Positions 32,401-35,400 are shown, numbered from the stretch's first letter. The stretch is DNA of 64,000 bases from Anolis carolinensis (GCF_035594765.1 NC_085845.1:166238897-166302896); one strand, 5' to 3'. Numbers and translations: made by a program. Notes: generated from the sequence alone by a model not told the origin.

Positions 32401-35400
32401 TCAGCTTCCTCAAACCCGTGCCACCCTGTTTGTTGATGTAGAAGACTGCCACTGTGTTGTCTGATTGAACGAGGACAGACTTCTGGGAGATCAGGCGGGA
32501 GAAGGCTTTCAGAGCTTTGAGGATAGCGAGAAGTTCGAGAAAGTTTATGTGATTGGTCCTTTCGGAACGAGACCAAAGACCTTGTATGGTGAGACTGCCC
32601 AGGTGGGCTCCCCAGCCGTAATTGGAGGAGTCCGTGGTCACGGTGACCGAAGGAGAAGGCTGGTGAAACGGGAGGCCCTTGCAAACGTTGGAGAGGGACT
32701 TCCACCAGCGGAGCGAGCGACGAACATGGAGCGGGATGGAGAGAAACCTCAAGTTGGGGTGGCGGGATGGTTTGAAGACGTCTATAAACCAACGCTGCAG
32801 GGTGCGAAGATGGAGCCTGGCAAACGGGGTCGTGAGGACTGTGGAGGCCATGTGGCCCAGGAGTACTTGGATGGACCGGGCTCGAACTCTCCGGTTGGTT
32901 TCGCAGAGGGAGATTTGATGCCGAAGGGCGAGAAACCTGTCGAGCGGGAGGGAGACAGTTTGAGAGAGTGAGTTGAACAGGGCGCCGATGAAGCGGATCT
33001 TGTTCGACGGAATAAGGTGAGATTTGTCGAGATTTAACTGGAGACCGAGAGAGTCGAGAAGAGTGAGGGTAACGTCGACGTGGCGACGGAGGAGGACAGG
33101 GTCGGGCCCGACCAGAAGCCAATCGTCCAGATATGGAAAAACTGTGATCCCTTGGAGTCTGAGGTGGGCAGCCACGACAGCGACGACTTTGGTGAAAACC
33201 CTTGGGGCTGTGACGAGGCCGAAGGGTAAAATGGTGAACTGGTAGGTCTGGTCGAGGACTTTGAAGCAAAGGAAGCGCCTGTGGCTTTTTCGAATCGCCA
33301 TGTGGAAATAAGCGTCTTGTAAATCTATGGAGACGAAGTAGTCTCCGCGCTGAAGCATGGGAAGGATGGAAGCGATGGATACCATTCTGAATTTTGTAGG
33401 GCGTATGAACGTATTGAGCACGCGCAAGTCCAAAATGGGGCGGAGCCCCCCTCCCCTCTTCGGGACCGTGAAGTACCTGGAGAAGAAGTTTTGAGGGTCC
33501 TGTACTGATGGAGAAGGCCGAATAGCCCCTTTGGCGAGGAGGGTGTCGATTTCGGCGAGAATTTCCTGAGAAGGGTTGGATAAAAGGATTTGCCCTGTGG
33601 GCGGGAGCTCTTCGAACTCCAAGGCATAACCGTCTCGAACAATTCGGAGAACCCAGGCATCCAAAGTAATAGATTCCCACTGATGGAAGAAAGGAGCCAG
33701 GCGATCTGAAAAGAGGCCGTGAGGTTGATGTAGCAGAGGGGAGGGCTGCGGAGGAGTGGGTCTTGCATCGATACCGGAGGTAGAGACCCGACAAGGAGAA
33801 ATGGCGTCAGGAGCGCCGATGAGGCTGGCCGGAGGTAGGAGTAGTACGGCCGCGCTGCTTCTGAGGATGAGCAGGCCGGCGAGGTTGTTGACGGTTCTGG
33901 TTATTCGAAACCGAGGGACGCCTGAAGGGCTGGTGTCGGTAAGAAGGAGGCGGAAATCGACGAAAGCGTTGAGGAAACCATTTGGTACGGTGAGTTTGAG
34001 GCTGGTCTCCACATTTGGTAGCCAGGACCTTAAAATCATGGTTAGTTTTGAGTTTATCGTCGGTGCCGGAATTAAAGAGACCCAAGGCGTCGAACGGAAG
34101 GTCTTCAATAACTTGTCTGGAGGAAGAAGACAGGCCCGACGATCTCAGCCAGGCGTGACGGCAGATGGCAATGGCGTGGGCGATCATCTTACCGGCCGTG
34201 TCGCCGGTATGTTTTGCCATCTGAATTTGATGATGGGCTAGGGAGTCAGCCTCTTGCTGAAGAGTAGACAACACCGAACGGTCCTCGTCAGACAGCTTTG
34301 AGAAGAAGGGTTGAGCTTTCTCCCAAAGGATTTGCTGGTATGCACCCATACAGGCCCCATAGTTCGCCATTCTGCAAAGTAGAAGGGCCCCAGAATAGAG
34401 CTTTCGGCCCACCGCGTCAAACCTTTTGCCCTCTCTATCCGCAGCAGTATTAGACTCACGACCGGAGGTCTGTGAAGCTTTAACGACCATAGAATTCGGG
34501 TCGGGATGGTGTTTTAGCCACTCTAAGGCATCGTCATCGGTGCGGTACCAGGATTCGATCCTTTTTGAGGTAGGAGGGATCGAGGAAGGAGTTTTCCAGG
34601 ATGCCTGGATGACGTCCAGAAGGTAAGGTAAGAACGGAAGCAGCGTGGCCGGGGGGGCTTGGGCTTGGACCCGCTTGAAAACCGGATCAGACACCGCCTT
34701 AGAAGTTTGTTTGATCTCTAGACCTAGAGCATCGGCCATTCTCACCATTTGGTCCGAAAAGGCCCGAATATTGTCTGTGGGTGAAGGAGGATCCACCTCG
34801 TATGCATCGTGAGGAGGAGAGAGGTCGAGGCCGAGAGACACCACCGAGGCTGAGAGAGCGGAGTCAGGGCGATCGATATCGATCTCATAGTCCTCAGCCC
34901 CTTGGGGGGACTGAGGGGGAGATGAAAGCACAGTCTCTGGGGGAGGCAAGGCCTCAAGAGCAGGAGCCATCTGAGCCCGAGTTTCTTTGGAGGCCGAAGC
35001 TTGGGCAGCTCGAGCCAAGCGGGTGGTTTGTCTACCCCGTTCCGGTGTCGAGGTCGGGGGAAAAAGCTGCTGGAGTGATGGATGATGCACGGCAGCAGGT
35101 CGAGGCGACGGCACCCTGACCACTGTTTGGGTGGAGTGGTGGGGTGAATCCTGAAGTTCACCATCAGACAGAACTCGAGGAGAGGGTTGACGAGGCCGTT
35201 GTGCAGGAGCGATCGGAGAGGATCTCCTAGAAGAAGTCGCCGAAGAAGAAGGGACGTCTTTTTTAGAAGAGGCAGAAGAAGAGGAGCGCTGGGTCGCTCT
35301 CTTTTTAGCAGGCGGCTGTTTAGAAGGAACCCTCATAGATTTTCCCGGCGTCGGAGGGACCATTGCCGAATCGGACTGGGTCCGACGAGCTTCCTCGTGG

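What the first reader, a model, noticed from the sequence alone, without database searches (positions are those of the whole stretch)
33750..33815. gag and the 988-codon recombinase frame are one ORF split by a single leaky-context UGA-C with a downstream stem-loop
Seen: gag ends CGC TCC TGA (33807-33809) and continues CGC CAT TTC TCC TTG..., in frame with ORF 30828..33794, whose listed start is only TTG. About 17 nt downstream is a stem GGGTCT/AGACCC (33784-33789 / 33758-33763) enclosing TACC-TCC-GGTA. Known: UGA-C plus a 3' structure is the classic programmed readthrough context. Inference: a Gag-linker-YR fusion of about 1680 aa made by readthrough would package the recombinase in the particle. 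Pol lies in the +1 frame and needs a separate route (ATG at 34039, frameshift or splicing).
Basis: partly seen in the sequence, partly recalled or inferred. Interest (0 to 1): 0.8.

Follow-up and report, generated by a model that had tools for sequence, protein, structure and literature searches.

The report
Leaky gag stop links recombinase
In this lizard DIRS retrotransposon, and in 54 of 71 related families sampled, the capsid-like gene and the recombinase gene share one reading frame broken by a single weak stop codon, so the recombinase is probably made as a Gag fusion by stop-codon readthrough; this would explain the unexplained long gene overlap of these elements.

Summary
The core observation holds. 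On the minus strand, gag (35876-33810), one TGA-C (33809-33807) and 992 further codons ending in the tyrosine recombinase (YR) form one frame with a single stop.

- The "recombinase frame" is recombinase only in its last ~345 codons. The first 647 codons ("X") are the -1 frame of pol.
- The proposed stem-loop is no better than chance and is broken in a sister copy.

X is stop-free by selection: 0 stops against 19 expected from synonymous shuffles. It is not conserved as a protein.

I compared 11 genomic or contig loci (frogs, lizards, a fish, a sea star) and 80 metagenome loci:
- In 54 of 71 scorable families, gag, one stop and X-YR lie in one frame.
- The gag stop is TGA (43) or TAG (11), never TAA. 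Pol and YR stops of the same elements are TAA in 26 of 93 cases (p = 2e-6).
- C follows TGA in 28 of 43 families, and TGA-CTA occurs in 10.
- X has 0 stops against about 1,249 expected.

The best reading is low-level readthrough giving Gag-spacer-YR, with pol reached by a +1 shift at or near the same stop. There is no experimental proof.

This copy's pol carries a premature stop. First readers noted the same one-frame pattern at two other copies in this genome.

The parts
30097..36073 (-). Whole DIRS1-like retrotransposon (~6 kb, GC ~55% in a ~35% GC region)
   Evidence: Inverted repeats and internal complementary region; composition; gag, pol and YR frames
35910..36064 (.). Left inverted terminal repeat (5' side of the element as transcribed)
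   Evidence: 155-nt arm, 97% complementary to 30140-30294
30140..30294 (.). Right inverted terminal repeat
30355..30447 (.). Internal complementary region (complementary to both termini)
   Evidence: 30355-30418 pairs with 30097-30160; 30411-30447 pairs with 36037-36073
33810..35876 (-). gag ORF, 689 codons, with an N-terminal Cys/His motif and a basic tail
   Evidence: Similar to the gag ORFs of Pogona, Melanotaenia, Xenopus and Pseudophryne elements. Substitutions against a sister copy fall 15/9/69 by codon position
33807..33809 (-). gag stop TGA followed by C (context UCC UGA C): proposed readthrough site, and possibly also a +1 shift site
   Evidence: family-wide stop usage
31866..33806 (-). 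X: 647 codons in the gag frame, which is the -1 frame of pol. Stop-free, without ATG, rich in Ser/Pro/Leu/Arg. Proposed translated spacer
   Evidence: 0 stops against 19 expected; no protein-level constraint; composition; no Pfam domain
30828..31865 (-). Tyrosine recombinase domain (345 codons plus stop TGA 30830-30828), in the same frame as gag and X
   Evidence: Homology to YR ORFs of other DIRS elements at 33-49% identity; weak Phage_int_SAM_4 hit
32006..33808 (-). pol (RT, RNase H, start of the methyltransferase-like domain), +1 relative to gag
   Evidence: RVT_1 at 8.5e-21 and RT_RNaseH; 38-46% identity to pol of other loci
32003..32005 (-). Premature in-frame TGA inside a conserved pol motif; this copy's pol is interrupted
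   Evidence: The pol frame continues with 50 conserved codons to TAA at 31849. Five relatives have a sense codon at this position
31849..32002 (-). Conserved C-terminal end of pol, cut off by the premature stop. The natural pol stop TAA at 31851-31849 lies 16 nt past the YR ATG
33810..34144 (-). Zone where the pol frame is open but only the gag frame is under protein constraint
   Evidence: Of 23 differences from the sister copy, 20 fall at gag position 3, which is pol position 2
33758..33789 (-). AGACCC)
   Evidence: Present, but not beyond chance and not kept in the sister copy

Best explanation
The finding sits at the gag/pol/YR junction of a DIRS1-like tyrosine-recombinase retrotransposon.

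Proposed mechanism:
- Ribosomes translating gag mostly stop at UGA-C (33809-33807).
- A small fraction reads through. These ribosomes continue for 647 codons in the -1 frame of pol. That stretch is kept free of stops but is otherwise unconstrained, so it acts as a translated tether.
- They then translate the recombinase domain, giving a Gag-spacer-YR fusion of about 1,680 residues. Such a fusion could carry the recombinase into Gag assemblies.
- Pol, in the +1 frame and open across the same stop, is most likely reached by a +1 shift at or within a few codons of that stop.

Shown here:
- The one-stop frame exists.
- Selection keeps the spacer frame open.
- The spacer lacks protein-level constraint.
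- The arrangement and the avoidance of TAA are conserved across families.

Inferred, not shown:
- That readthrough occurs.
- That the fusion is made and packaged.
- The route to pol.

This particular copy has a premature stop in pol and is probably not autonomous.
For: 1. One stop in 1,683 codons.
2. The spacer frame has 0 stops over 600 pol codons against 19 +/- 3.5 expected. The other alternative frame has 15 against 13 expected. The depletion is specific to stop-forming codon junctions.
3. The same holds in 9 of 9 loci tested singly and in 53 families together: 0 observed against about 1,249 expected.
4. In 54 of 71 scorable families, gag, one stop and X-YR are in one frame, and X opens directly after the gag stop.
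5. Gag stops are TGA 43, TAG 11, TAA 0. Pol and YR stops of the same elements are TAA in 26 of 93 cases (Fisher p = 2e-6).
6. TGA is followed by C in 28 of 43 families. TGA-CTA occurs in 10, and TAG-G, TAG-CGG/CGT and TAG-CAA also occur. From my own knowledge, these resemble known readthrough contexts.
7. There is no ATG in the spacer of this copy. The first ATG lies at least 100 codons after the gag stop in 20 of 54 families and at least 200 codons after it in 13.
8. Five of nine loci have no Met near the start of the YR domain, so YR cannot generally start on its own.
9. Against a sister copy, pol third positions (which are spacer first positions) change at 0.13 per site, about the rate of gag third positions (0.12). 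The spacer is therefore only required to stay open.
10. Upstream of the gag stop only the gag frame is constrained. The pol frame opens as little as 32-62 nt before the stop and has no ATG there in L001, L005, L007 and L009. This places entry into pol at or next to the stop.
Against: - There is no direct evidence of readthrough, of the fusion protein or of its packaging.
- No stimulatory RNA structure was found after the stop in this copy, in 10 loci or in 54 families. Pseudoknots could not be tested.
- Given gag -> pol at +1 and pol -> X at -1, the in-frame relation of gag and X follows automatically, so it is not independent evidence.
- TGA-C and TAA avoidance would also be expected for a +1 shift at a slow stop.
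- Ten families place X-YR in the +1 or -1 frame of gag, and seven have stops in X.
- Families are clusters at 80% identity, not phylogenetically independent events.
- The hosts of the metagenome loci are unknown.
- 40 of 70 upstream ORFs are called gag by position only.
- The sequencing runs were contigs of uncertain type and said nothing about transcripts.
Confidence: 0.55

Rival explanations
1. The long X-YR frame is translated, but ribosomes enter it by internal initiation (AUG or non-AUG, on the genomic RNA or a shorter transcript) near the gag end, not through the gag stop.
For: Many families have an ATG within ~40 codons of the gag stop (median 40). NCBI models such a protein in Anolis carolinensis (P0001). 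In class B and C families the X frame starts upstream of the gag stop and sometimes has an early ATG.
Against: This copy has no ATG for 647 codons. 13 of 54 families have none for at least 200 codons, yet the stretch is still stop-free. Internal initiation would not explain the avoidance of TAA at the gag stop. No recurrent joint or shorter form was seen, though the data were weak.
Confidence: 0.15
2. The leaky TGA-C serves only a +1 frameshift into pol, as at antizyme- or RF2-like shifty stops. X-YR is then reached from pol by a -1 shift early in pol, giving Gag-(short pol)-X-YR.
For: The context is UCC UGA C in this copy and in Xenopus, and CUU UGA C in Pogona. From my own knowledge these match the antizyme and RF2 shift sites. 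Pol is +1 and open across the stop in all class A loci, and no pol ATG is available in several. X is -1 of pol by construction.
Against: This needs two successive recoding events where one suffices. The codon before the stop is not conserved across families. In class C families X opens 50-341 nt upstream of the gag stop, while pol opens only 7-175 nt upstream of it (1 nt in L010) or downstream of it (L079, L002), so X is generally open further upstream than pol.
Confidence: 0.12
3. YR is made on its own from the ATG at 31865, for example by re-initiation after pol terminates 16 nt downstream. The open upstream frame would then have some other, unknown cause.
For: ATG 31865 sits just before the natural pol stop at 31849. 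Literature on the related Ngaro elements proposes a short-overlap -1 frameshift for YR (quoted in PMC13003380).
Against: The Met is not conserved; there is none near the domain start in L005, L006, L007, L002 or L010. This reading leaves 0 against ~1,249 expected stops unexplained.
Confidence: 0.08
4. The single stop and the open frame are chance products of a C/T-rich coding strand.
For: The coding strand is pyrimidine-rich, which lowers stop frequency.
Against: Synonymous shuffles that keep composition give 19 stops (minimum 8-9). The third frame has the expected number. The pattern is replicated in 53 families.
Confidence: 0.01

Closest known systems
DIRS1-like retrotransposons with a 'long ORF overlap' (e.g. 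AcDIRS2, XtDIRS2/3; Piednoel et al. 2011, PMC3266345)
   Same: ITRs plus an internal complementary region; gag, pol (RT/RH/MT-like) and YR. The YR ORF extends far over pol, and the catalytic domain lies in the non-overlapping 3' end.
   Different: The papers I could read record the overlap but give no mechanism or reason for it. New here: selection keeps the frame open, the frame begins at the gag stop, and that stop is a leaky type.
Gammaretrovirus Gag-Pol by UAG readthrough, and alphavirus or plant-virus UGA-C/CUA readthrough (my own knowledge, not checked in papers here)
   Same: A minority product that extends the structural protein past a single leaky stop into an enzyme domain. TAA is avoided. 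Contexts include TGA-C, TGA-CTA, TAG-G and TAG-CAA.
   Different: No 3' structure was found. The enzyme reached is the recombinase, not pol. About 650 codons of unconstrained sequence, double-coded over pol, lie in between.
Shifty-stop +1 frameshifting (antizyme UCC-UGA, RF2 CUU-UGA-C; my own knowledge)
   Same: UCC UGA C occurs here and in Xenopus, and CUU UGA C in Pogona. The +1 ORF (pol) is open across the stop.
   Different: The codon before the stop varies among families. No stimulator was found. It would explain pol, but not the open frame-0 stretch.
Ngaro YR retrotransposons
   Same: YR lies in the -1 frame of RT/RH, and recoding has been proposed for its expression (quotation in PMC13003380).
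   Different: In Ngaro the overlap is short and lies at the pol end. Here the YR frame spans all of pol and abuts gag.

Membership tests
DIRS1-like retrotransposon | Inverted terminal repeats | tested here: met
   155-nt arms, 97% complementary
DIRS1-like retrotransposon | Internal complementary region matching both termini | tested here: met
   30355-30447 pairs with 30097-30160 and 36037-36073
DIRS1-like retrotransposon | gag, then pol with RT and RNase H and a methyltransferase-like tail, then a tyrosine recombinase | tested here: met
   RVT_1 and RT_RNaseH. Conserved pol tail. YR homology. The Pfam recombinase hit is only weak, and pol is interrupted by a stop at 32005-32003
DIRS1-like retrotransposon | Long overlap of the YR ORF with pol (present in about half of described elements) | tested here: met
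   1,804-nt overlap; described in PMC3266345
Programmed stop-codon readthrough | Functional coding sequence in frame beyond a single stop | tested here: met
   The YR domain is in the gag frame with one stop between. This recurs in 54 of 71 families
Programmed stop-codon readthrough | Leaky stop identity and 3' context kept among relatives | tested here: met
   TGA 43, TAG 11, TAA 0, against 26 of 93 TAA at pol and YR stops (p = 2e-6). TGA-C in 28 of 43
Programmed stop-codon readthrough | Stimulatory RNA structure downstream of the stop (needed in some classes only) | tested here: not met
   z = +1.1 for this copy. No excess stability in 10 loci or 54 families. The stem is broken in a sister copy. 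No Rfam hit. Pseudoknots were not testable
Programmed stop-codon readthrough | Extended protein product demonstrated | not testable with these tools
   The runs were contigs of uncertain type; no proteomic or ribosome-profiling data were available
Shifty-stop +1 frameshift (antizyme/RF2 type) | +1 ORF open across the stop, with a known shift-prone codon before it | tested here: inconclusive
   UCC UGA C here, with pol open 335 nt upstream of the stop. The codon before the stop varies across families
Shifty-stop +1 frameshift (antizyme/RF2 type) | Frameshift product demonstrated | not testable with these tools
   No suitable data

The most novel reading that the evidence does not exclude
In most DIRS1-like elements of animals, one deliberately weak gag stop acts as a three-way switch. 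Termination gives Gag, a +1 shift gives Gag-Pol, and readthrough gives Gag-spacer-YR. The ~650-codon frame overprinted on pol is a translated tether selected only to lack stops. This would be the reason for the 'long ORF overlap'. The minority frame arrangements reach the same two fusions by other combinations of readthrough and +/-1 shifts.
Probability: 0.35. Interest if true: 0.85.

Novelty: new variant of a known kind. Interest (0 to 1): 0.72.

Why it matters
How DIRS elements express their overlapping genes, and why the recombinase ORF runs across the whole of pol, has been left open in the literature I could search.

This work turns the question into a specific, testable model. Every downstream ORF abuts or overlaps the gag end, so each is probably made as a Gag fusion by recoding.

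The model has two further points of interest:
- It would be an unusual case of double coding in which one frame is selected only for the absence of stops, over about 2 kb.
- It gives annotators a rule for recognising intact DIRS copies: one TGA or TAG, then an open frame through to the recombinase.

Tried and rejected
It folds no better than shuffles and is broken in a sister copy.
- **Any stable structure in the 60-120 nt after the stop.** None in 10 loci. In 54 families the result was no different from control segments 400 nt further on.
- **Hairpin enclosing the stop.** This was suggested by several loci (L081 9 bp, L085 8 bp, L007 and L009 7 bp). Over 54 families it was not significant (Mann-Whitney p = 0.06, median percentile 0.60).
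- **Rfam recoding elements.** None found.
- **Sequencing runs.** All were Logan contigs of uncertain type. They gave short pieces over the whole element and no recurrent joint skipping pol, so they were uninformative on transcripts or splicing.
- **Own-ATG recombinase.** The Met is not conserved.
- **Spacer as a conserved protein.** Rejected by the substitution pattern and by the absence of domains.
- **Turtle loci L004 and L012.** Too decayed to score.
- **L002.** It looked like a different arrangement, but it is probably the common one with a 1-nt indel in a G7 run.
- **Pleurodeles locus.** No DNA was returned.
- **Key reviews.** Those of Poulter, Goodwin and Butler were not held, so an earlier statement of the readthrough idea cannot be excluded.

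Full report
**What is there**

The finding lies in a ~6 kb, GC-rich (about 55%) insertion in AT-rich DNA, on the minus strand at about 30097-36073.
- It has 155-nt inverted terminal repeats (30140-30294 and 35910-36064, 97% complementary).
- It has an internal region (30355-30447) complementary to both termini. This is the signature of DIRS1-like retrotransposons.
- Three long frames are present:
  - gag: 35876-33810, 689 codons.
  - pol: +1 relative to gag, with RVT_1 at 8.5e-21 and RNase H.
  - A 988/992-codon frame ending at 30828.
- Earlier notes of this scan call the host a lizard. The closest protein is from Anolis carolinensis, at 88% identity.
- The element sits next to a BLTP3-type exon on the same strand.

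**Checking the observation**

Translation of 35876->30828 gives 1,683 codons with one stop, TGA at 33809-33807 followed by C. That part is correct, and so is the +1 position of pol. Two points need correction.

First, the "recombinase frame" is recombinase only at its end.
- The conserved YR domain starts near the first in-frame ATG, at 31865.
- The 647 codons before it ("X") overlap pol in its -1 frame.
- X is Ser/Pro/Leu/Arg-rich and has no domain hit.

Second, the stem GGGTCT/AGACCC is real as a string but carries no statistical weight.
- z = +1.1, and 176 of 200 shuffles fold at least as well.
- Its 5' arm is altered without compensation in a ~90% identical A. carolinensis copy.
- No Rfam family matches.

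**The open frame is selected**

- Over the 600 pol codons after the gag stop, the gag/YR frame has 0 stops. 5,000 synonymous shuffles give 19 +/- 3.5, with a minimum of 8-9.
- The third frame has 15 stops against 13 expected.
- 95 pol codons begin with AA, AG or GA, and none is preceded by a T-ending codon.
- T|AC, T|AT, T|GC and T|GT junctions are near expectation. The depletion is therefore specific to stops.

**The spacer is not a conserved protein**

Differences from the A. carolinensis sister copy (L003), by codon position:

| Region | Position 1 | Position 2 | Position 3 |
|---|---|---|---|
| gag | 15 | 9 | 69 |
| YR | 8 | 7 | 65 |
| pol within the overlap | 24 | 24 | 78 |

Pol third positions are the first positions of X. 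They change at 0.13 per site, about the rate of gag third positions (0.12). X is therefore constrained only to stay open.

In the 335 nt where the pol frame is open upstream of the gag stop, 20 of 23 differences fall at gag position 3. Only gag is coding there, so pol must be entered at or near the stop.

**Named relatives**

I fetched loci through protein hits. Gag, one stop and X-YR lie in one frame, with pol at +1, in the following:

| Locus | Host | Gag stop |
|---|---|---|
| L001 | Xenopus tropicalis | TGA-CTA |
| L007 | Pseudophryne | TGA-C |
| L008 | Pogona | CTT TGA C |
| L005 | Melanotaenia | TAG-A |
| L006 | Patiria miniata (sea star) | TGA-C |
| L009 | metagenome contig | TGA-C |

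- Pol identity to the window is only 38-46%, and gag is barely alignable.
- All nine loci tested singly have 0 stops in X against 15-26 expected.
- L010/L011 place X-YR in the +1 frame of gag, overlapping its last 185 nt.
- L002 looked similar but is probably the common type with an indel in a G7 run.
- The turtle loci were too decayed to score.

**Large sample**

A pol alignment (A1) retrieved 80 metagenome loci. I clustered these together with the named loci at 80% pol identity. That gave 71 scorable families.

| Class | Arrangement | Families |
|---|---|---|
| A | gag, stop, X-YR in one frame; X opens directly after the stop; no X stop before the pol stop; pol at +1 | 54 |
| B | gag, stop, pol in one frame; X-YR at -1, overlapping the gag end | 4 |
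| C | X-YR at +1, overlapping the gag end; pol at -1 | 6 |
| Z | stops in X (decayed, or truly without a long overlap) | 7 |

Within class A:
- The gag stop is TGA 43, TAG 11, TAA 0. Pol and YR stops of the same elements are TAA in 26 of 93 cases (Fisher p = 2e-6).
- TGA is followed by C in 28 of 43 families, and TGA-CTA occurs in 10.
- After TAG come G (6 families), CGG/CGT (3) and CAA (1).
- X stops over pol: 0 observed against about 1,249 expected in 53 families.
- The first in-frame ATG after the gag stop is at a median of 40 codons. It is at least 100 codons away in 20 families and at least 200 in 13.
- Five of nine loci have no Met near the YR domain start.

**Interpretation**

- The frame across pol is translated in full. 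Nothing else explains stop avoidance over ~2 kb in every family.
- Because X abuts or overlaps the gag end in classes A, B and C alike, ribosomes most plausibly enter it from gag.
- In class A, the majority class that includes this window, that means readthrough of a stop that is never the strong TAA and usually sits in a context known to be leaky. That last point rests on my own knowledge of UGA-C, UGA-CUA, UAG-G and UAG-CAA contexts.
- Pol has no usable ATG in several families. It opens as little as 32-62 nt before the stop, and it is unconstrained upstream of the stop. A +1 shift at or next to the same stop is therefore the likely route.
- UCC UGA C (here and in Xenopus) and CUU UGA C (Pogona) recall the antizyme and RF2 shift sites, but the preceding codon is not conserved.

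**Limits**

- Nothing here measures readthrough.
- Given gag -> pol at +1 and pol -> X at -1, the in-frame relation of gag and X is partly automatic.
- TAA avoidance could serve the +1 shift.
- Families are not independent events.
- The hosts of the metagenome loci are unknown.
- 40 of 70 upstream ORFs are gag by position only.
- No stimulatory structure was found, and hairpins enclosing the stop are not enriched. Pseudoknots could not be tested.
- The sequencing runs were contigs of uncertain type and were uninformative.

**This copy**

Pol carries an in-frame TGA at 32005-32003 inside a conserved motif. Five relatives have a sense codon there, and the pol frame continues for 50 conserved codons to TAA at 31849. 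The copy is young but its pol is interrupted. I give no repair.

**Literature**

- The long pol/YR overlap is described (PMC3266345; PMC9210276; PMC6681497).
- A -1 frameshift is proposed for Ngaro elements (quoted in PMC13003380).
- Searches for readthrough or frameshift in DIRS papers found no statement of the Gag-YR readthrough idea.
- The main reviews were not held, so priority cannot be excluded.
- First readers of this scan noted the same one-frame pattern at two other copies in this genome.

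Noticed in passing
window 32003-32005 (minus strand): Premature in-frame TGA in pol inside a conserved C-terminal motif. Five relatives have a sense codon there, so this copy's pol is truncated by about 51 codons.
   Followed up: yes
L010:2983-3170, L011, L060, L069, L079, L084, L052: A minority arrangement (class C). The X-YR frame is +1 of gag and overlaps the last 50-341 nt of gag; pol is -1 of gag. 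This implies a different pair of recoding events.
   Followed up: partly
L027, L028, L048, L073/L074: A second minority arrangement (class B). Pol follows gag in the same frame after one stop (retrovirus-like readthrough layout), and X-YR overlaps the gag end in the -1 frame by 37-106 nt.
   Followed up: partly
class A families, pol stop codons: Pol stops are TAG in 31 of 53 families (TAA 11, TGA 11). This skew is unexplained. The pol stop lies inside the X/YR frame near the start of the recombinase domain.
   Followed up: no
L081, L085, L007, L009 gag stops: In a few families a 7-9 bp inverted repeat encloses the gag stop codon. Over all 54 families this is not more than chance (p = 0.06).
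   Followed up: yes
L002:2600-2660: Two G7 runs lie between the gag stop and the conserved pol start. A 1-nt indel there would turn this contig's odd frame layout into the common one. It may be an assembly error or a mutated copy.
   Followed up: partly
window 25367-26908 (minus strand): A 513-codon ORF matches Pfam BLTP3A_B (3.5e-147). It is a large host exon on the same strand as the DIRS element, so the element lies in or beside a BLTP3-type gene.
   Followed up: partly
window 58677-60212 (plus strand): A 511-codon ORF with an RVT_1 domain (5e-35): another retroelement in the window, unrelated to the DIRS (no tblastn match to its pol).
   Followed up: no
window 38413-38478: A (TA)n microsatellite.
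   Followed up: no
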